NCBI RefSeq assembly: GCF_006345805.1
Contig: NC_043011.1
Span: 32,500,464 to 32,564,463 of the forward strand
From: Octopus sinensis
Taxonomy: Eukaryota
DNA: 64,000 nucleotides
Reading direction: 5' to 3'
Shown piece by piece: positions 1,978-53,149 of this stretch. The translations under genes were made by a program, and so were the position numbers. Under the pieces are notes generated by a model. It was not told the DNA's origin. It did not search any database and saw nothing but the letters and a program-made list of their open reading frames with translations. The stretch's first letter is position 1; the number at the start of each line of letters is the position of its first letter.

Positions 1978-2049
1978 GCAGATTTGCATGTTTTATGTAT
2001 GTATTCTCATGCATATAGTTGCATATCTAGACATGCTCATATATATTTA

Positions 2050-2430
2050 AATGATAAACTTCTGGAAAGTTTTACAGATTTTTACAGTTCCAGGGATGGA
2101 TTGGATCTGTGCTCTTCGAATTAGCTTTCTCCTTCCTGGTTTTGAGAAGCCTAATTTCTCAAGATTGGTATTTAGGCAGTGTGTTACATATCCCAGGACC
2201 CCAATAATTACAGGTATAAACCTGAACATGTAATCTGGATATAGTAATTGCAGATTTCTCAATAGTTCAGAATAGGTGTTCTCTTTTTCACTGATCTTCA
2301 GTTTTATGTTAACATCCGCTGGGCAGCTAATTTCCACAACTGTGCACAGTTTCTCTTCTCTATCCCAAATCATTATATCAGGCCTGTTGTGCTTACATTT
2401 TATTGAAGTCTTCACTGGTATATTCCACTT
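2050..2430 (-). mobile_element. Non-LTR retrotransposon 3' fragment, restriction-like endonuclease domain (R4/Dong-type RLE LINE)
   Basis: C-terminal half of ORF 2047..2829: KHNRPDIMIWDREEKLCTVVEISCPADVN...KENTY...FIPVIIGVLG, a PD-(D/E)xK-type RLE motif. Confidence 0.85.
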
Positions 2431-2660
2431 GTATGTATGTATGTTTGCATGTATGTATGTATGTATGTATGTATGTATGTATGTATGTATGTATGTATGT
2501 ATGTATGTGTATTTATGTATGTATGTATGTATGTATGTATGCATGTATGTATGTATGTATGTATGTATGTATGTATGTATGTATGCATGTATGTATGTAT
2601 GTATGTATGTATGTATGTATGAATATATGTATGTAGTATGTATGTATGTATGTATGTATG
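2431..2660. repeat. (TATG)n microsatellite
   Basis: Direct reading. Confidence 0.95.
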
Positions 2661-2884
2661 CCAGTGGATGCATTCCACTGATGTATAATGCCGAACGATA
2701 TGAACATCGGCGTGAAAAGCGATAAAATTGAGCTCTCGAACAAAATACCTTGGTAGTATTTGTTTCGTCCAAGTTACTTAGATGCTTCCTTGTCGCTTTT
2801 GACGTTATAAATTTTGTGGACTGAACCATTTAAACCTGCAACTAACAGCGTTCTTGTCCATAAAGTGCAAAATAAAATCAACAG

Positions 2885-4472: not shown

Positions 4473-4544
4473 CTAAGGTCCTGTGAGTGGATTTGGTGGA
4501 CGGAAACTGAAAGAAGCTCGTCGTATATATATATATATATATAT

Positions 4545-4615
<71 letters not shown>

Positions 4616-4832
4616 CTTCGTGTTTGAGTTTGGCTCCCCATCTCCACTTGACTACATCCGTGTTCATGTGTTTATGACACCCGTAACTTAGCGGTTCGGC
4701 ATAAGGGACTGATAGAATAAATACTAGGTTTTAAAAAATAAGTCCTGGGGTCGATTTGTTCAATTAAAACACTTCAAGAAGGTGCTCCAGCAAGGTAACT
4801 GTCAAATAACTGAAACAAGTACAAGAATAAAA
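4473..4832 (+). mobile_element. SINE A, 5'-truncated
   Basis: GTGAGTGGATTTGGTGGACGGAAACTGAAAGAAG, (TA)(TG) array, tail ..ACTGAAACAAGTACAAGAATAAA. Confidence 0.85.
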
Positions 4833-9572: not shown

Positions 9573-9717
9573 ACATTATTTAGATATAAGAACGACAACA
9601 TACGTTTTCTGGAGCATTTGGCACCAAAGCCTTTCTGGATTTCAGTATTTTTCCGAGACAGGTCTGGTTACCTTGGCAGCAAACTCGAAATTAAGCAAAA
9701 ATTAAATTTACTTAAAT

Positions 9718-9960
9718 AAGCGCGGGTATGGCTGTGTGGTAAGAAGATTGCTTCCCTACTACATGGTTCCGCGTTCAGTCTCACTGCATGGCACCTTGGG
9801 CAAGTGTCTTTTGGTCATCCTCGGGCTGACCAAAGCCTTGTGAATGGATTGGGTAGATGGAAACTGAAAGAAGCGCGCCGTGTGTGTGTGTGCGTACGTA
9901 TGTGTATGTATGTATGTATGTATGTATGTATGTATGTATGTATGTATGTATGTGTGTGCA

Positions 9961-9991
<31 letters not shown>

Positions 9992-10211
9992 ATGTGTGTG
10001 TCATTGTGCCTGTTTGTCCCCCAACACCGTTTGACAACCGATGCTGGTGTATTTACGTCCCAGTAACTTAGCGGTTCGGCTTAAGAGATCGATGGAATAA
10101 GTATCAAGCTTAACAAGTAAGTACTGGGGTCGATTTCTTCGACTAAAAATTCTTCAAGGCGGTGCCCCAGCTTGGCCGCACTTTAATGACTGAAACAAGA
10201 TGAGACATAAA
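9718..10211 (+). mobile_element. SINE A, full length
   Basis: Head GGTATGGCTGTGTGGTAAG, internal (TG)/(TATG) array, tail GACTGAAACAAG. Confidence 0.88.
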
Positions 10212-11030: not shown

Positions 11031-11398
11031 AAAAGAGAAAGTAAGAGAGAGAGAGAGGGGGGATGGGCTATGCCTTGTTGATTTTCCCAATGTTATCCAA
11101 AGGATGGGCATATTTTCCAGTGAATCAAGGGCTACTACAAACCCAGTAAGTCAAAGGTTTCGTCACACAACAAGGGAGGCGAATGCATAATGTTTACTCG
11201 TTGACCGGGAACCTCTACGCGATTATTCGATCTGGTAAAAGAATAAACGGCAAGAATAATTTCCTAGGGGTAGCAATGACTGTGTAGTTAAGAAGGGAGC
11301 TTAGATAAATATCTTCTCCTATAACCCCGAACCGTCCAATAGGTTGTGAGTGAATTCGATAGACGGAAACTGTGTGGAAGCTCGCCATATATGAATAT

Positions 11399-12050
11399 AT
11401 ACAGGCGTGACTGTGTGGTAAGAAACTTGCTTCCCAACCACATGGCTCCGGGTTCAGTCCCACTGCGTGGCATCTTGGTCAAGTGCCTTCTACTATAGCT
11501 TCAGGTCGACCAAACACTTATAAGTGGATTTGGTTGATGAAAACTGAATGAAAGCCCGTCGTATATATCTTTATATATAAAAGTCAAGTTGTGTATCTGT
11601 CTCCTACGATTTAGATTCCTAACTACTCCCACATTTTGGGGTGCAGTGAACCAAAAGCGGGTATCTTATAGTCGTGATTCATATCGAGCCCTTCTGGGTA
11701 TTAGCGCGCGTCTACGATGAGGCTACGATTTTAAAAATAATTTACCATCATTTTTTTTCATTTTAATGCATTTTTCGCTATTATATAAGGGAAGTAACTC
11801 TCTAAAAATGTTTACGATGAGTCAACGATTTAAAAAAAAATTACCATAATTTTTTTTCCATTTTTAATGCATTTTTTTGCTATTTTTTGGCTATAACTCT
11901 CTAAAAATGCTTATATAGTTATTTCCCTTACAAACCCGAGCAACGCCGGGCGATGCTGCTAGTATGTATATATATATATATATATATATCGATGTGTGTG
12001 CGTCTTTGTTTTTGTTCCCTCATCATCGCTTGGCTACCAGTGTATTTGAG
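11399..12050 (+). mobile_element. SINE A interrupted by a Helitron in its microsatellite
   Basis: Head at 11399-11560; (TA)n and SINE body resume after 11962. Confidence 0.75.
11568..11962 (+). mobile_element. Non-autonomous Helitron, copy 1
   Basis: A|TC 5' end, 3' hairpin CCCGAGCAACGCCGGG followed by CTAG|T; second copy at 29056. Confidence 0.85.
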
Positions 12051-13171: not shown

Positions 13172-13562
13172 CCTTTATTTCTTTTACTTGTTTCAGTCAT
13201 TTAACTGTGGCCATACTGGAGCACCGCCTTTTAGTCGAGCAAATCGACCCCAGGACTTATTTTTTGTAAGCCTAGTACTTATTCTATCGTTCTCTTTTGC
13301 CGAATCGCTAAGTTACGGGTACGTAAACACACCACCATCGGTTGTCAAGTGATGTTGGGGGGGGGAGACAAACAGACACACAAACATATACACACAGACA
13401 CACATATATATACATATATACGACTGGCTTCTGTCAGTTTCCGTCTACCAAATCCACTGACAAGGCTTTGGTCGGCCCGAGTCTATATTAGAAGAGTGGG
13501 ACTGAACCCGGAACCATGTGGTTCGCAAGCAAGCTACTTACCACACAGCCACTCCTACGCCT
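13172..13562 (-). mobile_element. SINE A moiety of 5S-SINE composite 1
   Basis: Full SINE A with a short internal deletion near 13495; head abuts the 5S 3' end. Confidence 0.88.
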
Positions 13563-13570
13563 AAATGAAT

Positions 13571-13675
13571 GCTTACAGCACCTAGGTTTCCCAAGCGGTC
13601 ACCCATCTAAGTACTAACTAGGCTCGACGTTGCTTAACTTCGTTGATCAGACGAGAACCGGTGCTTTCAACGTGG
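13571..13675 (-). pseudogene. 5S rRNA: 5S rRNA copy, 5'-truncated by ~13 nt
   Basis: Minus strand CCACGTTGAAAGCACCGGTTCTCGTCTGATCAACGAAGTTAAGCAACGTCGAGCCTAGTTAGTACTTAGATGGGTGACCGCTTGGGAAACCTAGGTGCTGTAAGC; canonical 5S motifs. Confidence 0.93.
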
Positions 13676-14504
13676 AAAGAATTATGAATAGGCTTGAACA
13701 AAAAAGCCAAACTGAATAAAATGCCCAGACTTGTTCAAATAGAGATTCAGCGTCTATGCTTTTTCTTACTTCAGGTATTGAACTGCAGCCATGCTGGGGC
13801 ACGGCTTTGAAGGTTTATTTTTTTCAGCCGATCAAATCGACTCCAGAATTCAATTTAAATTAAGCCTGGAACTTATTCTATCGGACGTAAAAGAAGCCTA
13901 CACCGATTATCACGTGACTCATGTCAAATGAGAAAGATTTCACGCGAATGGGTTTGGTAAGAGCAAGATGGCAGCATGAGGCGTGTGGTGGGTTGATGAT
14001 GTGTGTTTGAGTGTATGGTTAAAATATATGAGCAGACGATTATCAGTGTGCGTGTGTGTGTGTGTGTGTGTGGGTGTTTTAGAGGAAAGCATGTTGCTTA
14101 TTGAAATCAAGATAGGCAGCAGTGTTAGGAGGTGAAAGATAAATTGTTTTTCAAGAAAAAGTCGGGAAACAAGAGCTCTATAGCATTGTACAGTCCCACA
14201 AATAGATGCAAGAGAGAAAAACATTGAAAAACTGAAGGAGCAAAGCATAGACCTGAGTCGTTCGGTGTTATTGAGTTTAAAGTTTTACAAATGACCTCTA
14301 AAACTACCGGCCAACATCTAACCAGTTTTTTTTCTATGTACAGTAAGCTATACTGATGATGTCTAATGAAGCTGATGACATTTTTTGCAAGTTTAATTGA
14401 AGCGGTCTCCGTGACATGGAAATATAACTAAGGACTACGCACGATGGTGATGTTCTTGAAGAGATATGTGATGAATAAAACAAGTAAAACAAGTAGTAAA
14501 AAAT

Positions 14505-21454: not shown

Positions 21455-21640
21455 TGTCTTTTATCTTTATCTTTTACTTGTTTCAGTTATTTGACTGCGG
21501 CAATTCTGGGGCACCGCTTTGAAGAGTTTTAAAGCTTGGCACTTATTTTTATCAATCTCTTTTGACGAATCGCTTGATTACAGGGACGTAAACTCACCAA
21601 AACCGGTTGTCAAGCGGTGGTGGGGGACATCACATACACA
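21455..21640 (-). mobile_element. SINE A tail fragment, diverged
   Basis: CTTTTACTTGTTTCAG..GACTGCGGC..GGACGTAAAC. Confidence 0.7.
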
Positions 21641-33015: not shown

Positions 33016-33823
33016 CACACACACACACATATATGTATGTATGTGTGTGGTGTGTGTATCTTTTATTTTCACTTGCTTCAGTCATTAAACAGCGGCCTTG
33101 CTGGGGCTCCACCTTGAAAAATTTCCCCCCAGTACATTTTTTAATCTTGGTAATTATTCTGTCTCTTTGTCGAGCAGCCAGGTAATGGGGACGTAAACAC
33201 ACCAACACACCAACACACCAAGTGGGGGACTAACACAAAGATACACACAGACACACACACAAACCCAAACCCTCACCGTCACACACACACACAGACATAC
33301 ACACACACACACACACACAAATATATATATGTATGAGCTCGAAGAAACATCATGAATACAAATGAATGTTTCACTGTAACAATAATCGATTGTTCACTGC
33401 AAGATCACAATAATTTCGTCACTTCAAGGCCAAATCAGTCAATACTTGACTGAAAGATTAATCAATGTTCCACAGCAATGTTAGTCAATTTGACACTCCA
33501 AGATCGATCAATGATTCACTGAAGTGGCTGTGAGGATAGGCGCAGGCGTGGCTGTGTGGTAAGAAGTTCGCTTTCGAACAACATGGCTCCGGGTTTAGTC
33601 ATTGCGTGACATCGTGGGCAAGTGTCTTCTACAATAGTCTCGAGTCGAGCTGACTAAAGCTTCGTAAGTTTGGTTGATGGGAAGCCCGGTGTTTATATAT
33701 ACATATATTTATATATATATATATACACGCACACACACATACACACACACACATATATATATCTATATACATATCGCTATTCACTAAACCTTTATTATTT
33801 TCTCTCTCCGTTTATTTCTGTAT

Positions 33824-36866: not shown

Positions 36867-37494
36867 TATTATTATAATATATATATATAATATTGTCTGC
36901 TACGGTCACCGGAACTGCCGGATCATGTTGTTTCGACATACTGCGTCTCTTTCGTCGGAGCCGTCCGATAGCCGTACACCAGCCAAATCTCACTGCTAAG
37001 GATATATAGAAGAATTCCACTGACGTTTCAGGCACTGATGTCGCAACAGCCAACTGGCTTATTAAAAAAATGATTGTTAGCAACAGGAGCTGTATTAATC
37101 AACTAAATGTAGGTGTTTTATTATAGCGGCGAATATTTCTATATTTCTATATTCATCTTGAGGAGACCTCTCATATGGACGGATGTTGCACCATGGTTTA
37201 TTAAGTTTGAAAATATAAATAAACTTGAGAGTTAAAACTAAGGATCAGTTCTTGGCTAATCCCAAAATGTCTCCCAGTCTCCGTCTCAAGCACTTCATTC
37301 AAATCTTTCTTTTTAATGTCTGGAAATTTCCTGCTGCCAAGTTTTTCCACTCTAACCAATCTGTAGAAGCTGAAACAGATGATGAGCTGCATCAGTTTTC
37401 CTAACATGAGAGAATGGAAGAGATTGAATTCGTCGTCAGAGTAAATAATTCTTTCTATTTTTGCCATAAAACCAGCCATTTCAGGGGAAGGGCA

Positions 37495-38345
37495 AGTCAA
37501 TTATATCGACCCCAGTGCTTACTTTATCGACCCCGAAAGGATAAAGGGCAAAATTAACGTTGGTGGTATTTGAACTACGAACGTGAGGAGTCGGAAGAAA
37601 TACCTATTTCTTTATTACCCACAAGGGGCTAAACATAGAGGGGACAAGCAAGGACAGACAAACGGATTAAGTCGATTATATCGACCCCAGTGCGTAACTG
37701 GTACTTATTTAATCGACCTCGAAAGGATGAAAGGCAAAGTCGACCTCGGCGGAATTTGAACTCAGAACGTAATGGCAGACGAAATACGGCTACGCATTTC
37801 GCCCGGCGTGGTAACGTTTCTGCCAGCTCGCCGCCTGCTCGCCGGAAGAAATACCTATTTCTATTTCTTTACTACCCACAAGGGGCTAAACACAGAGGGG
37901 ACAAACAAGGACAGACAGACGGATTAAGTCGATTATGTCGACCCCAGTGCGTAACTGGTACTTATTTAATCGACCTCGAAAGGATGAAAGGCAAAGTCGA
38001 CCTCGGCGGAATTTAAACTTAGAACGTAGCGGAAGACGAAATACCTATTTCTATTTCTTTACTACCCACAAGGGGCTAAACACAGCAGGGACAAACAAGG
38101 ACAGACAGACGGATTAAGTCGATTATATCGACCCCAGTGCGTAACTGGTACTTATTTAATCGACCTCGAAAGGATGAAAGGCAAAGTCGAACTCGGTGGA
38201 ATTTGAACTCAGAACGTAACGGCAGACGAAATACGGCTACGCATTTCGCCCGGCGTGGTAACGTTTCTGCCAGCTCGCCGCCTGCTCGCCGGAAGAAATA
38301 CCGCTAAGCAGTTTGTCCGACGCGCTAGCGATTCTGCCACCAGTT
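37495..38345 (-). mobile_element. Nested SINE B insertions inside an older SINE B
   Basis: Units 37604-37835 and 37855-38282 (dimer); direct repeats at 37592-37603, 37836-37854 and 38283-38301. Confidence 0.88.
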
Positions 38346-39907: not shown

Positions 39908-40619
39908 TACCATTAATAATCAGCAGAGGTTCCAGAGTTACTCAAGGGCTGAAAGTTTCGTGCATTGGCACTTATCAAACTGGTTTCAAATCAAGGGGAT
40001 GACTCTTATAAACGGGTGATAATTATATTTCTCTGGATTGTTCTGGAACAAATTATAAAAAATATTGCAGTGTCACGTGGATAATACATATTTTTCAAAT
40101 TGCTTGTTACGCGGTTCAATAATGAATATATATATATTTACACACACTTTACATAGATATCTTGTTTAGTAGCATATAAATTTTATTTTGCATTGCAAAT
40201 TTCTGAGAAAAGATAATTCTCATTCCACGTTTAAAAAAGGAAAAGCCACACAAATTAATGTACCAAACAAAATAACGAACAGAATTCCTCACGTTTAAAA
40301 TCATACTGCAAAATCATAAGTACTTTCTTTCACAACACATTTAATCAAATTAATAAAAACAATATGTAGCATATACATACACTACGAAGCCTATAAACTC
40401 AATGGCAATTTCTACGAGATTTCACAAACGTAAATACACACATTTTCAAACATAATGCACCCACTTTTAAGAATATCAACTTGCCTGGTCTTTAATATTC
40501 GATGACGTATTGGGAAAGCGTTCTGTTTCGAACTGGACGGAACTGCATTGTATCATAACATGCATGGTACTAGAACAAGGACCCAGTATTGTAACAGCTT
40601 GGGTTTCAAGGATTCACAA

Positions 40620-40862
40620 CTCTTTTACTCTTTTACTCTTCTACTTGTTTCAGTCTTTTTGAATCTGGCCATGCTGGAGCATCGCCTTTTAGTCGAGCAA
40701 AACGACCCCAGGACTTATTCTTCGTAAGCCTAATACTTATTCTATCGGTCTCTTTTGCCGAACCGCTAAGTTACAGGGACGTAAACACACCAGCATCGGT
40801 TGTCAAGCGATGTTGGGGGAGACAAACACAGACACACGAACACACATACGTACGCACACACG

Positions 40863-40894
<32 letters not shown>

Positions 40895-40906
40895 CACACA
40901 CACATA

Positions 40907-40939
<33 letters not shown>

Positions 40940-41102
40940 CGACGGGCTTCTTTCAGTTTACATCTACCAAATCCACTCACAAGGCTTTGGTCGGCCCGAG
41001 GCTATAGTAGAAGACACTTGCCCAGGTGCCACGCAGTGGGACTGAACCCGGAACCATGTGGTTCGTAAGCAAGCTACTTACCACACAGCCACTCCTACAC
41101 CT
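40620..41102 (-). mobile_element. SINE A moiety of 5S-SINE composite 2
   Basis: Full-length SINE A; head abuts the 5S 3' end. Confidence 0.92.
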
Positions 41103-41112
41103 ATTTAGAAAG

Positions 41113-41232
41113 ACGTTTACAGCACCTAGGTTTCCCAAGCGGTCACCCATCTAAGTACTAACTAGGCTCGATGTTGCTTAACTTCGGTGATCGGACGAGA
41201 ACCGATGTTTTCAAAGTGATATGGTCGTAAAC
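41113..41232 (-). rRNA. 5S rRNA: Full-length 5S rRNA copy (probably retroposed)
   Basis: GTTTACGACCATATCACTTTGAAAACATCGGTTCTCGTCCGATCACCGAAGTTAAGCAACATCGAGCCTAGTTAGTACTTAGATGGGTGACCGCTTGGGAAACCTAGGTGCTGTAAAC; helix I and helix V pair; only TTT downstream. Confidence 0.93.
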
Positions 41233-42697
41233 TATTTAACATTCTACCAATACAACCTCAGAAATCTGCGAGGTGTAGATACGGAGGTCTTTAAAGAACT
41301 TATAGACAATTTTTTATCTGAGATTCCAAATGAGCTCACATCGCGGCAGAAGGCGCAAAGAAGAGCAGCTTCGTCCAACTCGCTGCTTCACCAAAAATGA
41401 TACAGAAAAGAAATCCAATAGCACTAAAAGCCGGTGCTCCAGAATGGCCTCAGCTTCTGGCTGAAACCAGTAAAATACAAAAAATAAAAGATAAAAGAAA
41501 AATTTCCTGAAAGGTAAAGAACATCTTCCCGTTTCCTCTCTTCATTTACACTATTATAGTGTATCCATGTCCAACTCGACGAGAGCTTTCAACCTTATAT
41601 CTTTATTTGAGCATTTCTTTACCAAGAAACACTTTTACGCGTAACGAGACGACGATGCATACTTTACGTTTAATTCTAGATCCACTGAAAGATAAAGAAT
41701 GTTTCCATGTTTCTTCACCTAATTTAGTCTGTTATCGTTTATACAGGATCCAGCTCAGCGAGTACTTTGAGTCTTACGTCTTTATTTGAGCACCTCTCTT
41801 CAAAGATATCTTTTTAAACGTCATGAAACGAAAACAAATTCTTTGGTTATGAAGATCAGTGACTGGATAAGAATCCATCTACAACAAAAGTCGATACTCG
41901 ATTCGTAAGCCATAAAACTAGCATCGTACTTGTTCGTAGATGACACAGTATGTTATCGACACGTTCAACACTATAACAATTTGTTTTTCAAATTTCATAA
42001 ACGCATTTCCAAACGATCAATTAAATTAAAACAAAGTACATTCAAAAGCTCTTATGACAATACTTTATACTCTCTCCATATAAGACCTCTTTATTTTTAT
42101 ATGAACGGGTCTTTATATGCTGCTGGTATAATCTATCTTCCGTGAGTCGATGAATCGCAATTTCGTCATCTCTGGGGTACCATCTTAAAGGATTTAGTCG
42201 AAAAAACATCGGCACTACATATTCTTAAGCCTGGTGCTAATTCTATCCGTCTCTTTTGCCGTAAACAAACCAAGACATCATCAAAGGGTGATAGGGGACA
42301 AATACAAACATGTTTATATGAAAGACTCTCATACAGTTTCCAGCTACAAAATTCTCTTACAAGGCATTGGTTGAATCGGAGTTACAGTAGCAGACATGTG
42401 CTCAAAGTGCTGAGTTGTGGGACTGAAACCAAAAGCACGTGGTTGCAAAACGAGATCCTTAACCACACACCCATGTTTGAGACTATATAACAGTCACGTA
42501 TTTTATTCTTGAAAAAACAACTTCGATAGGAATCGAACTCAGAAACTGATGGACAACACTAACAATGCCACGTTAATTACTCGAACGTTCTAAGTTCCCC
42601 AGTCATTCAAATCTCTTTCCGAATTCATGTAGTATTGGTGATGTTATGTGTTGCTTATTTTGGGGAGAATATAACAAGAATAGTAGTAGTAGTTATT

Positions 42698-46174: not shown

Positions 46175-46274
46175 NNNNNNNNNNNNNNNNNNNNNNNNNN
46201 NNNNNNNNNNNNNNNNNNNNNNNNNNNNNNNNNNNNNNNNNNNNNNNNNNNNNNNNNNNNNNNNNNNNNNNNNN
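46175..46274. other. Assembly gap (100 N)
   Basis: Direct reading. Confidence 1.
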
Positions 46275-49448: not shown

Positions 49449-49749
49449 TCCGTGTGTGTGTCCTTGTGTCTGTGTTTGTACCCTACCACCGCTGGACAAC
49501 CGGTGTTGGTGTGTTTACGTCTTGGTAACTTAGCTGTTCGGCAAGAGAGAACAATATAATAAGTATTAGGCTTTAAAAAATTAAGCACTGGGATCGATTC
49601 ATTCGACTAAAATTTCTTCAAGCCGGTGCCCCAGAATGGCCACAGTCGAAATACTGAAACAAGTAAAATGATATATAATTTTTTTTAATCTGTTACTAGT
49701 TTCAGTCATTAGGCTGCGGCCATGCTGGGATACAACTTTGAATAGTATA

Positions 49750-52618: not shown

Positions 52619-53149
52619 TTGAATAACTTTTCACCGCAAAATTTATTTCGCGATCATCAACGAAAGCTTGGGAGAGCAGATAATAGATTTTCAGAGCAAA
52701 ACGATAGTATATATTCTTCATTGTCAAGTCTACTACCAACGTCCGAGACATTTTTAGATTTTGGTGCTTTAAAACCTTTGAGCAATTTAGTTAATTGCGA
52801 TAAATCGGCCTTACTTTCTGAACTTACTGTGGCTAAAGCTTACATTTCCCAACAGAATATGATGACATTGCTTTATATTTTTGGATCTTTACGTATTGTA
52901 CAGGATGCCTTTCCAAATGTTTATCTTTTGTATGGTACAGCATTAACATTTGAATCTAGCACAGCTACATGTGAATCATCGTTTTCGACGCTGACTCGAA
53001 TTATGACACCCTTTCGATGAAATGTGAAGCACTAACGAAAATCAAACCTCGTGATACTTGCTTCCCTTAATAAATACAAATCAAGTATAGACAAGGAAGA
53101 TTTTCTTAAATTTTTTGCCTTGCGTTGCTGTAGATTTCAGTTGTATTAA
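52619..53149 (+). mobile_element. hAT transposase C-terminal fragment (ZMYM1-like group), disrupted by stops
   Basis: RFSEQND..FLDF..FPNVYLLYGTALTFESSTATCESSFSTLTRIMTPFR*..RKSNLVILA, an hAT dimerisation-domain pattern. Confidence 0.8.

What the first reader, a model, noticed from the sequence alone, without database searches (positions are those of the whole stretch)
40620..41232. 5S rRNA + tRNA-SINE composite inserted as a single unit: candidate 5S-headed SINE subfamily
Seen: on the minus strand a full 120-nt 5S rRNA is followed after about 10 nt by a complete SINE A. Removing 40620-41232 rejoins an older LINE ORF in frame (..GFKDSQ|LFNILP..), with AACT at both junctions. A second composite lies at 13172-13675. 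The two 5S-linked SINE moieties share three variants that most other same-subfamily copies here lack: CGCCTTTTAG (4 T versus 3), GGGAGACAAAC and CATGTGGTTCG (versus TTGG). Inference: 5S and SINE moved together from a common master transcribed from the 5S internal promoter, reading through a weak TTT terminator. Known: 5S-headed SINEs (SINE3, AmnSINE1, OS-SINE1) and 5S chimeric retrocopies occur in vertebrates; I am not aware of this composite in cephalopods but cannot search for it.
Basis: partly seen in the sequence, partly recalled or inferred. Interest (0 to 1): 0.85.

Follow-up and report, generated by a model that had tools for sequence, protein, structure and literature searches.

The report
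5S rRNA fused to a SINE
A copy of 5S ribosomal RNA joined head-to-tail to a complete short mobile element jumped into this cephalopod-like genome as one piece, at least twice. It looks like an early stage of a known way in which new mobile-element families arise; it is not a new kind of element.

Summary
Rfam finds only two 5S rRNA sequences in the 64 kb: 41232-41114 (100.8 bits) and 13689-13570 (77.6 bits), both on the minus strand. Each is followed after 6-10 nt by a full SINE A on the same strand. Chance adjacency is about 1e-6.

Joining the flanks of 40620-41232 restores a LINE reading frame (..YCNSLGFKDSQ LFNILP..). The join is collinear with independent LINE copies at protein and DNA level, with one AACT at the site. 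So the 5S and the SINE went in as one unit. The host LINE is the SINE's own partner family: it encodes endonuclease plus reverse transcriptase and shares the SINE's 3' tail.

The second composite lacks 5S positions 1-14, as expected for 5' truncation during reverse transcription.

A common master is not shown. The two SINE parts are not each other's closest relatives. Three shared variants is background level, and one of them is ancestral.

Copy density and a published O. bimaculoides repeat table listing SINE/5S and SINE/5S-Core-RTE favour a multi-copy 5S-headed composite family (about 0.55). The main rival is repeated, non-propagating template-switch chimeras (about 0.33). No cephalopod DNA collection was searchable, so the genome-wide test remains open. 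I rate it a new member of a known kind, of moderate interest.

The parts
41114..41232 (-). 5S rRNA moiety of composite 1. Full length, with the internal promoter region (box A, IE, box C) conserved.
   Evidence: Rfam RF00001 scores 100.8 bits, model positions 1-120.
41104..41113 (-). Linker TCTTTCTAAA between the 5S 3' end and the SINE A start. It holds only a T3 run.
   Evidence: Stand-alone SINE A copies start at (A/T)TAGGCG...
40620..41103 (-). Complete SINE A. Head with A-box-like TGGCTGTGTGG and B-box-like GGTTCAGTCCC (about 41103-41030). CORE-like body (to about 40940). Internal (TA)n(TG)n microsatellite (about 40939-40828). LINE-derived tail ending in (GTAAAAGA)n (40827-40620).
   Evidence: Blastn against about 14 other copies in the window. 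Tail alignment to LINE 3' ends. K2P distance 0.043 from the window consensus.
40618..40621 (+). AACT, left copy of the 4-nt target duplication or microhomology.
   Evidence: The empty site holds one AACT.
41230..41233 (+). AACT, right copy. It overlaps 5S positions 1-3 (GTT on the minus strand).
40506..40619 (+). Left part of the interrupted LINE 3' fragment (C-terminal ORF ..YCNSLGFKDSQ).
41233..41520 (+). Right part of the LINE fragment. It reads (L)FNILP, then has a 1-nt insertion near 41250, then ..LRNLRGVDTEVFKE..LLHQK and a stop. The 3' UTR ends with the same motif as the SINE A tail, followed by (ATAAAAGA)n.
13570..13674 (-). 5S moiety of composite 2. It matches from 5S position 15 onward. 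The 15 nt upstream (13675-13689) are included by Rfam but are unrelated (3 of 14 matches).
13564..13569 (-). Linker TTCATT of composite 2.
13172..13563 (-). SINE A of composite 2, with a 22-nt deletion in the head/body. A T5 run lies directly after the tail.
   Evidence: K2P distance 0.058 from the consensus.

Best explanation
Each locus is a retrocopy of a single RNA. That RNA had a 5S rRNA sequence at its 5' end and, a few nucleotides later, a whole SINE A.

Steps shown or inferred:
- Reverse transcription started on the SINE A tail. The tail copies the 3' UTR of an endonuclease plus reverse-transcriptase LINE family (RTE-like by size and layout). This is shown by tail homology; the enzyme's role is inferred.
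- It ran through the SINE and into the 5S. It reached the 5S 5' end at 41232 and stopped at 5S position 15 in the copy at 13674.
- The cDNA was joined to the target with a 4-nt duplication or microhomology (shown for composite 1).

Most likely (inferred) the RNA came from composite source genes. These would be transcribed by RNA polymerase III from the 5S internal promoter, reading through the T3-only junction into the SINE. On that reading the two copies belong to a low- to medium-copy 5S-headed offshoot of SINE A.

The first composite itself was probably made by a reverse-transcriptase template jump from the 5' end of a SINE A RNA onto 5S rRNA.
For: Single-unit insertion:
- The flanks rejoin to a LINE frame that is collinear with a 984-aa LINE protein: residues 903-974, 53 % identity, no gap.
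- They are collinear with nine other relatives and with an independent DNA copy, L003, with no gap at the join.

Non-random linkage:
- 2 of 2 5S sequences are linked, in the same order, strand and spacing.

Partner LINE:
- The tail motif CTAAAAG[G/C]CGGTGCTCCAG.ATGGCC.CAG..CTGAAAC.AGTAAAAGA is shared by the SINE tails and three LINE 3' ends.
- P0001 carries Exo_endo_phos and RVT_1 domains.

5' truncation inside the 5S of composite 2 shows that cDNA synthesis ran from the SINE into the 5S.

Read-through is feasible. There is no T4 run at the junctions, the 5S promoter region is intact, and 5S positions 62-116 are identical in the two copies although the SINE parts differ by 9 %.

Family rather than one-off events:
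- 2 of about 14 full-length SINE A copies in 64 kb are composites.
- In the human genome only 253 LINE-1 chimeras of all kinds were catalogued, and they do not self-propagate (bioRxiv 10.1101/2025.02.02.635956).
- De novo repeat annotation of O. bimaculoides lists SINE/5S at 0.030 % and SINE/5S-Core-RTE at 0.021 % of repeats (PMC8967140 Table S2).

Precedent: a 5S sequence added in front of a tRNA-headed SINE gave the AmnSINE1/SINE3 group (Nishihara 2006, as cited in PMC4758252, PMC4824008 and PMC4494074).
Against: No clade is shown. The SINE parts are not closest relatives and share only a background number of rare variants, one of them ancestral.

The linkers differ (10 vs 6 nt) and align only loosely.

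Only two copies could be examined, and no cephalopod genome could be searched.

The link between the published '5S-Core-RTE' label and this particular composite is unverified. The species of the window is not established.

The SINE's own A/B-box promoter lies inside the composite and could drive ordinary SINE A transcripts instead. No transcript evidence exists.
Confidence: 0.55

Rival explanations
1. Independent, non-propagating chimeric retrocopies. In each of two separate SINE A retropositions the LINE reverse transcriptase reached the 5' end of the SINE RNA and jumped onto a cellular 5S rRNA (or the two RNAs were ligated first). The copies were dead on arrival as composites.
For: - The order is that of template-switch chimeras: small RNA at the 5' end, retroelement at the 3' end, same strand, flanked as one unit (features described).
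- The linkers differ in length, and the SINE parts show no clade.
- The 5S moiety of composite 1 is structurally near-perfect, as a fresh copy of cellular 5S rRNA would be.
- Template switching onto 5S rRNA is the proposed origin of known 5S-headed SINEs (PMC4824008).
Against: - Such events are rare where they have been counted. Humans have 253 LINE-1 chimeras in the whole genome, 10.5 % of them with 5S, and those 5S segments are mostly antisense and truncated.
- Here 2 of about 14 full-length SINE A copies in 64 kb carry a sense, complete or near-complete 5S.
- No other small RNA is fused to any SINE A copy in the window.
- Both junctions carry non-U bases after the 5S (TCTTTC / TTC), which a mature 5S 3' end plus an end-to-end jump does not predict.
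- All six 5S differences lie outside the promoter half.
Confidence: 0.33
2. Two sequential insertions. A 5S retropseudogene landed in the LINE, and a SINE A later inserted exactly at its 3' end (or the reverse order). This happened twice, for example because the LINE endonuclease favours the sequence after 5S.
For: SINE A copies in the window have no clear target duplications. A nested event would therefore leave no obvious scar.
Against: - The same order, strand and 6-10-nt spacing would have to arise twice.
- Other SINE A copies sit in unrelated A/T-rich contexts with no 5S-like flank.
- A 5S rRNA without the LINE-type tail is not an expected template for a LINE that recognises its own 3' end, and no solo 5S copy exists in the window.
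- Composite 2 is truncated inside the 5S, as expected if one cDNA ran from the SINE into the 5S.
Confidence: 0.04
3. DNA-level copies of a genomic 5S gene unit whose spacer holds a SINE A (segmental duplication or rDNA fragment dispersal), with no RNA-mediated insertion.
For: Transposable elements are known in 5S spacers of other animals (PMC10946416).
Against: - Composite 1 starts within 0-3 nt of 5S position 1 (the AACT duplication overlaps positions 1-3) and ends at the SINE tail. It has a 4-nt duplication and no 5S upstream or spacer sequence.
- The flanks of the two composites are unrelated.
- The two copies differ by about 9 %, so they are not a recent local duplication.
Confidence: 0.03

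Closest known systems
AmnSINE1 / SINE3 / OS-SINE1 (5S-headed DeuSINEs of vertebrates; Kapitonov & Jurka 2003, Nishihara 2006, as cited in PMC4758252, PMC4824008, PMC4494074)
   Same: A 5S rRNA sequence sits in front of a tRNA-headed SINE that has a conserved central domain and a LINE-derived tail. The 5S internal promoter is the presumed driver, and the origin is ascribed to a template switch from SINE RNA to 5S rRNA.
   Different: Those families kept only part of the tRNA head and carry a Deu domain with CR1/L2-type tails. Here the whole tRNA-type head, with both A- and B-box-like motifs, is still present. The body is CORE-like and the tail is that of an RTE-like LINE. The host is a mollusc, and family status is unproven.
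[quoted passage not shown] 2022, PMC8967140, Table S2)
   Same: The module order implied by the label matches this composite: 5S head, CORE body, RTE tail. The genome type also matches, being dominated by tRNA-Core SINEs and RTE-BovB LINEs.
   Different: These are only an automated class label and a frequency (0.021-0.039 %). No sequence or description is given, so identity with this composite could not be checked.
Chimeric retrocopies made by LINE template switching (U6/L1, 5S/L1; Buzdin 2002/2003 as cited; bioRxiv 10.1101/2025.02.02.635956)
   Same: The small RNA is at the 5' end and the retroelement at the 3' end, inserted in a single event and flanked as one unit.
   Different: Human chimeras use L1 and a variably truncated 3' partner. 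Their 5S segments are mostly antisense and truncated, they are very rare, and they do not propagate. Here the 3' partner is a full SINE, the 5S is in sense orientation, and the density is far higher.
MEG-TR of fruit bats and other 5S SINEs (MEG-RL/RS, Ped-1, HaSE3 of Lepidoptera; listed in PMC10946416 Table 2, PMC10886601, PMC3272025)
   Same: They are SINEs that use a 5S-derived promoter. MEG-TR combines tRNA- and 5S-derived modules (its structure is from my memory of Gogolevsky 2009, which I did not read here). HaSE3 shows that 5S SINEs occur in invertebrates.
   Different: Different hosts, partner LINEs and module order. None is from a mollusc.
Octopus CORE-SINEs OR1/OR2 (Ohshima & Okada 1994, as cited in PMC4824008 and PMC4758252)
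   Same: SINE A has the expected make-up of an octopus tRNA-Core SINE: A/B boxes and a CTTGGGCAAGT..AGCCTC.G core-like stretch.
   Different: Those families are described without a 5S head.

Membership tests
SINE (SINEBase definition, PMC3531059) | Short (<1 kb) interspersed, non-tandem repeat | tested here: met
   The composites are 613 and about 503 nt long. They lie at two unrelated sites 27 kb apart.
SINE (SINEBase definition, PMC3531059) | [quoted passage not shown] | not testable with these tools
   No cephalopod genome was searchable. The only hints are indirect: 2 copies in 64 kb and PMC8967140 Table S2.
SINE (SINEBase definition, PMC3531059) | Head with at least 60 % identity to tRNA, 5S rRNA or 7SL RNA over at least 60 nt | tested here: met
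   Rfam 5S_rRNA scores 100.8 and 77.6 bits, full model.
SINE (SINEBase definition, PMC3531059) | [quoted passage not shown] | tested here: inconclusive
   Extra body is present, namely a whole SINE A. Shared diagnostic substitutions could not be judged because the functional 5S sequence of the species is unknown, and SINE-part sharing is at background level.
5S-headed SINE (SINE3 / 5S-Core-RTE type) | 5S-derived head retaining the internal control region (box A, intermediate element, box C) | tested here: met
Positions 62-116 are identical in both copies.
5S-headed SINE (SINE3 / 5S-Core-RTE type) | 3' tail shared with a partner LINE | tested here: met
   The tail motif aligns with the LINE 3' UTR in the window and with those of L001 and L003. 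The LINE has APE and RT domains. Assignment to the RTE clade was not formally tested.
5S-headed SINE (SINE3 / 5S-Core-RTE type) | CORE central domain | not tested
   The resemblance of ACCTTGGGCAAGT..AGCCTCGG to the MIR core is from memory only. The literature says octopus SINEs are mostly tRNA-Core.
5S-headed SINE (SINE3 / 5S-Core-RTE type) | Transcribed from the 5S promoter and amplified from composite source genes | not testable with these tools
   There are no RNA data. Only the absence of a T4 terminator at the junction was seen.
tRNA-derived SINE (for the SINE A moiety) | Head recognisable as tRNA | tested here: not met
   ARAGORN finds no tRNA. The Rfam tRNA model gives no hit even at E<=10 on the head. 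Only A-box-like and B-box-like motifs are seen, so 'tRNA-derived' rests on the literature class and not on a test here.
Template-switch chimeric retrocopy | Small RNA at the 5' end, retroelement at the 3' end, same orientation, one insertion event | tested here: met
Template-switch chimeric retrocopy | Each copy is an independent event: variable junctions, no shared diagnostic changes, no propagation | tested here: inconclusive
   The junctions differ in length but share ..TTC.A..TAGG. There is no clade signal. Density argues against rarity.

The most novel reading that the evidence does not exclude
This is a young, still two-promoter SINE family of octopuses: a complete 5S rRNA head placed in front of a complete tRNA/CORE SINE. 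It would be amplifying from composite masters by read-through from the 5S promoter. That would make it a living intermediate of the route by which 5S-headed SINEs such as AmnSINE1/SINE3 arose in vertebrates, evolved independently in a mollusc.
Probability: 0.4. Interest if true: 0.55.

Novelty: new member of a known kind. Interest (0 to 1): 0.4.

Why it matters
The birth of 5S-headed SINEs is inferred from old, already-trimmed families, in which a 5S sequence was added in front of a tRNA-headed SINE. If these composites amplify as such, octopus genomes hold the untrimmed first stage. Both promoters are intact and the partner LINE is identifiable.

That would let two questions be tested directly: how a new promoter module is captured, and how one of the two promoters is then lost.

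There is also a practical point. Composites are likely to be split by repeat maskers into 'rRNA' plus 'SINE/tRNA-Core'. That would inflate 5S pseudogene counts in cephalopod annotations.

If they are only independent chimeras, they would still point to an unusually high rate of template jumping onto 5S rRNA by an RTE-like reverse transcriptase.

Tried and rejected
- Word-indexed protein search with the ORF spanning the 5S-SINE junction, meant to fish other composites out of public assemblies: no candidate.
- The same search with the joined LINE peptide: none. The exhaustive representative search then worked.
- Exact-pattern scans for the junction, for the species-type 5S 30-mer and for a SINE A 32-mer in metagenome, prokaryote-genome and viral collections: all zero. 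These collections hold no usable cephalopod DNA, so the negatives say nothing about copy number.
- Look-ups of window ORFs by exact product, to find the locus in other assemblies: not on record.
- Contigs that carry the LINE relatives are 1-4 kb, too short to sample the genome for more composites.
- Full-text search for the SINE and 5S strings and for '5S-Core-RTE': no paper.
- Nishihara 2006, Buzdin 2003, Albertin 2015 and Walker & Doolittle 1983 are not held. They are cited second-hand.
- My first direct join (40619|41233) gave a 93-aa open frame. This turned out to be a coincidence: a missing C at the join compensates for a 1-nt insertion about 18 nt downstream in the LINE.
- TSD search for composite 2: only a non-adjacent 7-mer, rejected as chance.
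- Rfam in E-value mode gave only microsatellite noise besides the two 5S.

Full report
**What is there**

Rfam at gathering threshold finds exactly two RNA genes in the 64 kb. Both are 5S rRNA on the minus strand: 41232-41114 (100.8 bits, model 1-120) and 13689-13570 (77.6 bits). A permissive scan adds only microsatellite noise. ARAGORN finds no tRNA.

- a head with A-box-like TGGCTGTGTGG and B-box-like GGTTCAGTCCC;
- a CORE-like body;
- an internal (TA)n(TG)n microsatellite;
- a unique tail ending ..GACTGAAACAAGTAGAAGAGTAAAAGAGTAAAAGAG at 40620.

About 14 other copies with an intact 5' end lie in the window. Their alignment puts the SINE start at (A/T)TAGGCG... The gap between 5S and SINE is therefore 10 nt in composite 1 and 6 nt (TTCATT) in composite 2.

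The junction pattern occurs twice, against zero in 100 shuffles. With 14 SINE starts on two strands, the chance that both 5S copies are followed by one within about 11 nt is about 1.4e-6. The adjacency is real.

**One insertion event**

The left flank ends ..TAC TGT AAC AGC TTG GGT TTC AAG GAT TCA CAA (YCNSLGFKDSQ) at 40619. The right flank reads TTT AAC ATT CTA CCA (FNILP). It is preceded by CTA, whose C is base 41232.

An exhaustive HMMER search with the joined peptide found 25 relatives. The best is a 984-aa protein with Exo_endo_phos and RVT_1 domains. It aligns over residues 903-974 without a gap. Nine shorter relatives give the consensus ..YCNSLGFKxxQLFNILPKxLRxLxGVxVxxFKE...

The pre-insertion sequence was therefore ..TCACAACTATTTAAC.. 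with one AACT. The filled site has AACT at 40618-40621 and at 41230-41233, and the net insert is 612 nt.

An independent DNA copy of a related LINE (L003, a Logan contig) aligns across the reconstructed empty site with no gap at the junction. It also reveals a 1-nt insertion in the window's LINE near 41250. That insertion explains why my first blunt join gave a spurious 93-aa frame.

Its coordinates are one base generous. The duplicated AACT overlaps the first three bases of the 5S, so it may be a 4-nt target duplication or microhomology used at the 5' join.

Other SINE A copies in the window show no clear duplications. A short one is therefore normal for this element.

**The machinery**

The interrupted LINE fragment (about 40506-41520, plus strand) ends with ..GCACTAAAAGCCGGTGCTCCAGAATGGCCTCAGCTTCTGGCTGAAACCAGTAAAATACAAAAAATAAAAGATAAAAGA. 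This is the same motif as the SINE A tail. The LINE contigs L001 and L003 carry it too.

SINE A therefore borrows the 3' end of this endonuclease plus reverse-transcriptase LINE family. The family has a single ORF of about 1,000 aa on an element of about 3.3 kb, which is RTE-like, but the clade was not formally tested.

The composite happens to have landed, in antisense, in a copy of its own partner LINE.

Composite 2 resembles 5S only from position 15. The 14 nt upstream match at 3 of 14 positions. This is what 5' truncation of a cDNA that started in the SINE tail and ran into the 5S would give.

**Family or repeated accidents?**

Window data do not settle this.

Against a demonstrated common master:
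- The SINE parts are 90.9 % identical, but each is nearer to the stand-alone copy at 469-5 (92.2 % and 91.7 %).
- They share 3 exclusive variants, like several unrelated pairs. A true sub-lineage (15662/51267) shares 9.
- The extra A in CTAAAAGG is also the LINE state, hence ancestral.
- CGAACC also occurs in the head at 33536.
- The linkers differ in length and align only as ..TTC.A..TAGG.

For a propagating family:
- Both composites are among the least diverged SINE A copies (K2P 0.043 and 0.058).
- Neither junction has a run of four T. By established knowledge, four is about the minimum for polymerase III termination in animals. The consensus SINE has none either.
- The 5S promoter half (positions 62-116) is identical in the two copies, while all six 5S differences lie in positions 18-61. 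Post hoc, (47/102)^6 is about 0.01. SINE3 families show the same pattern (PMC10886601). However, three of the six changes lie at CpG sites (two are typical CpG transitions).
- The density is hard to reconcile with one-off chimeras. Two of about 14 full-length SINE A copies are composites. The most complete human catalogue lists 253 LINE-1 chimeras in the whole genome, about a tenth with 5S, mostly antisense and truncated, and non-propagating.
- A published de novo repeat annotation lists SINE/5S (0.030 %) and SINE/5S-Core-RTE (0.021 %) for O. bimaculoides, and SINE/5S (0.039 %) for O. vulgaris. It also lists 31 % tRNA-Core and 14-15 % RTE-BovB (PMC8967140 Table S2). The label matches this composite's module order. 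No sequence is given, so identity is unverified. The paper's text does not discuss it.

I put the propagating-family reading at about 0.55 and independent template-switch chimeras at about 0.33. Nested insertions or DNA-level copies together get under 0.1.

**Comparison with what is known**

Adding a 5S sequence to the 5' end of a tRNA-headed SINE, probably by a template switch, is the accepted origin of AmnSINE1/SINE3/OS-SINE1.

5S SINEs are also known in fruit bats, a rodent and Lepidoptera. A 2024 review table lists no mollusc.

The differences here are the retention of the whole tRNA-type head (two promoters), the CORE-like body, the RTE-like partner and the host. This makes it a new member of a known kind. 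It is possibly an early-stage one, and it is apparently already picked up by automated annotation but never described.

**Limits**

- The species was not identified.
- The human 5S used for the promoter comparison, the T4 rule, the promoter-box coordinates, the MIR-core resemblance and the MEG-TR structure are from my own knowledge, not from tools.

Noticed in passing
window 40506-40619 and 41233-41520 (+): The host of composite 1 is a 5'-truncated 3' fragment of the partner LINE of SINE A. Its 3' UTR carries the SINE tail motif and an (ATAAAAGA)n end. It has a 1-nt insertion near 41250 that shifts the frame.
   Followed up: yes
window 41218-41114 vs 13674-13572 (-): All six differences between the two 5S moieties fall in 5S positions 18-61. 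Positions 62-116 are identical although the attached SINEs differ by about 9 %. The cause is unexplained: promoter constraint in a master lineage, 5S gene variants, or chance.
   Followed up: partly
window ~13166-13162 (-): A T5 run lies directly after the tail of composite 2. It would be a ready polymerase III terminator if that copy is transcribed.
   Followed up: no
window 9713-10199 (+), 4482-4832 (+), 49451-49668 (+), 21457-21627 (-): A second, older SINE A-like subfamily carries an insertion of about 9 nt (AAATTCTTC) just before the LINE-derived AAGGCGGTGC motif. It is about 80 % identical to the main subfamily.
   Followed up: partly
window 11312-11579 (+): A SINE A body fragment runs straight into a new SINE A head where the microsatellite should be. 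This is either a SINE-in-SINE insertion or a SINE-SINE chimera.
   Followed up: no
window 37400-38300 (+); also 22727, 3859, 49040; L001 3190-3291: Several tandem or near-tandem copies of another short repeat contain CCACAAGGGGC. The same repeat follows the LINE tail in the ENA contig L001, which suggests that contig comes from a related host genome.
   Followed up: no
window 52619-53020 (+): This ORF has a hAT-family C-terminal dimerisation domain (Pfam PF05699, E=1.6e-5). It is a remnant of a hAT DNA transposon.
   Followed up: partly
window 2047-2829 (-): A 260-aa ORF has a non-repetitive C-terminal half (..NRPDIMIWD..VVEISCP..VIIGVLG..) that resembles retroelement ORF ends seen in invertebrates. 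It has no Pfam hit.
   Followed up: partly
window 46175-46274: A 100-N assembly gap.
   Followed up: no
whole window: Dense TA/TG/CA microsatellites, many of them inside SINE A copies, give dozens of sub-threshold matches to miRNA families (mir-297, mir-3149, mir-466) in Rfam E-value mode. None reaches a gathering score, so they are noise.
   Followed up: yes
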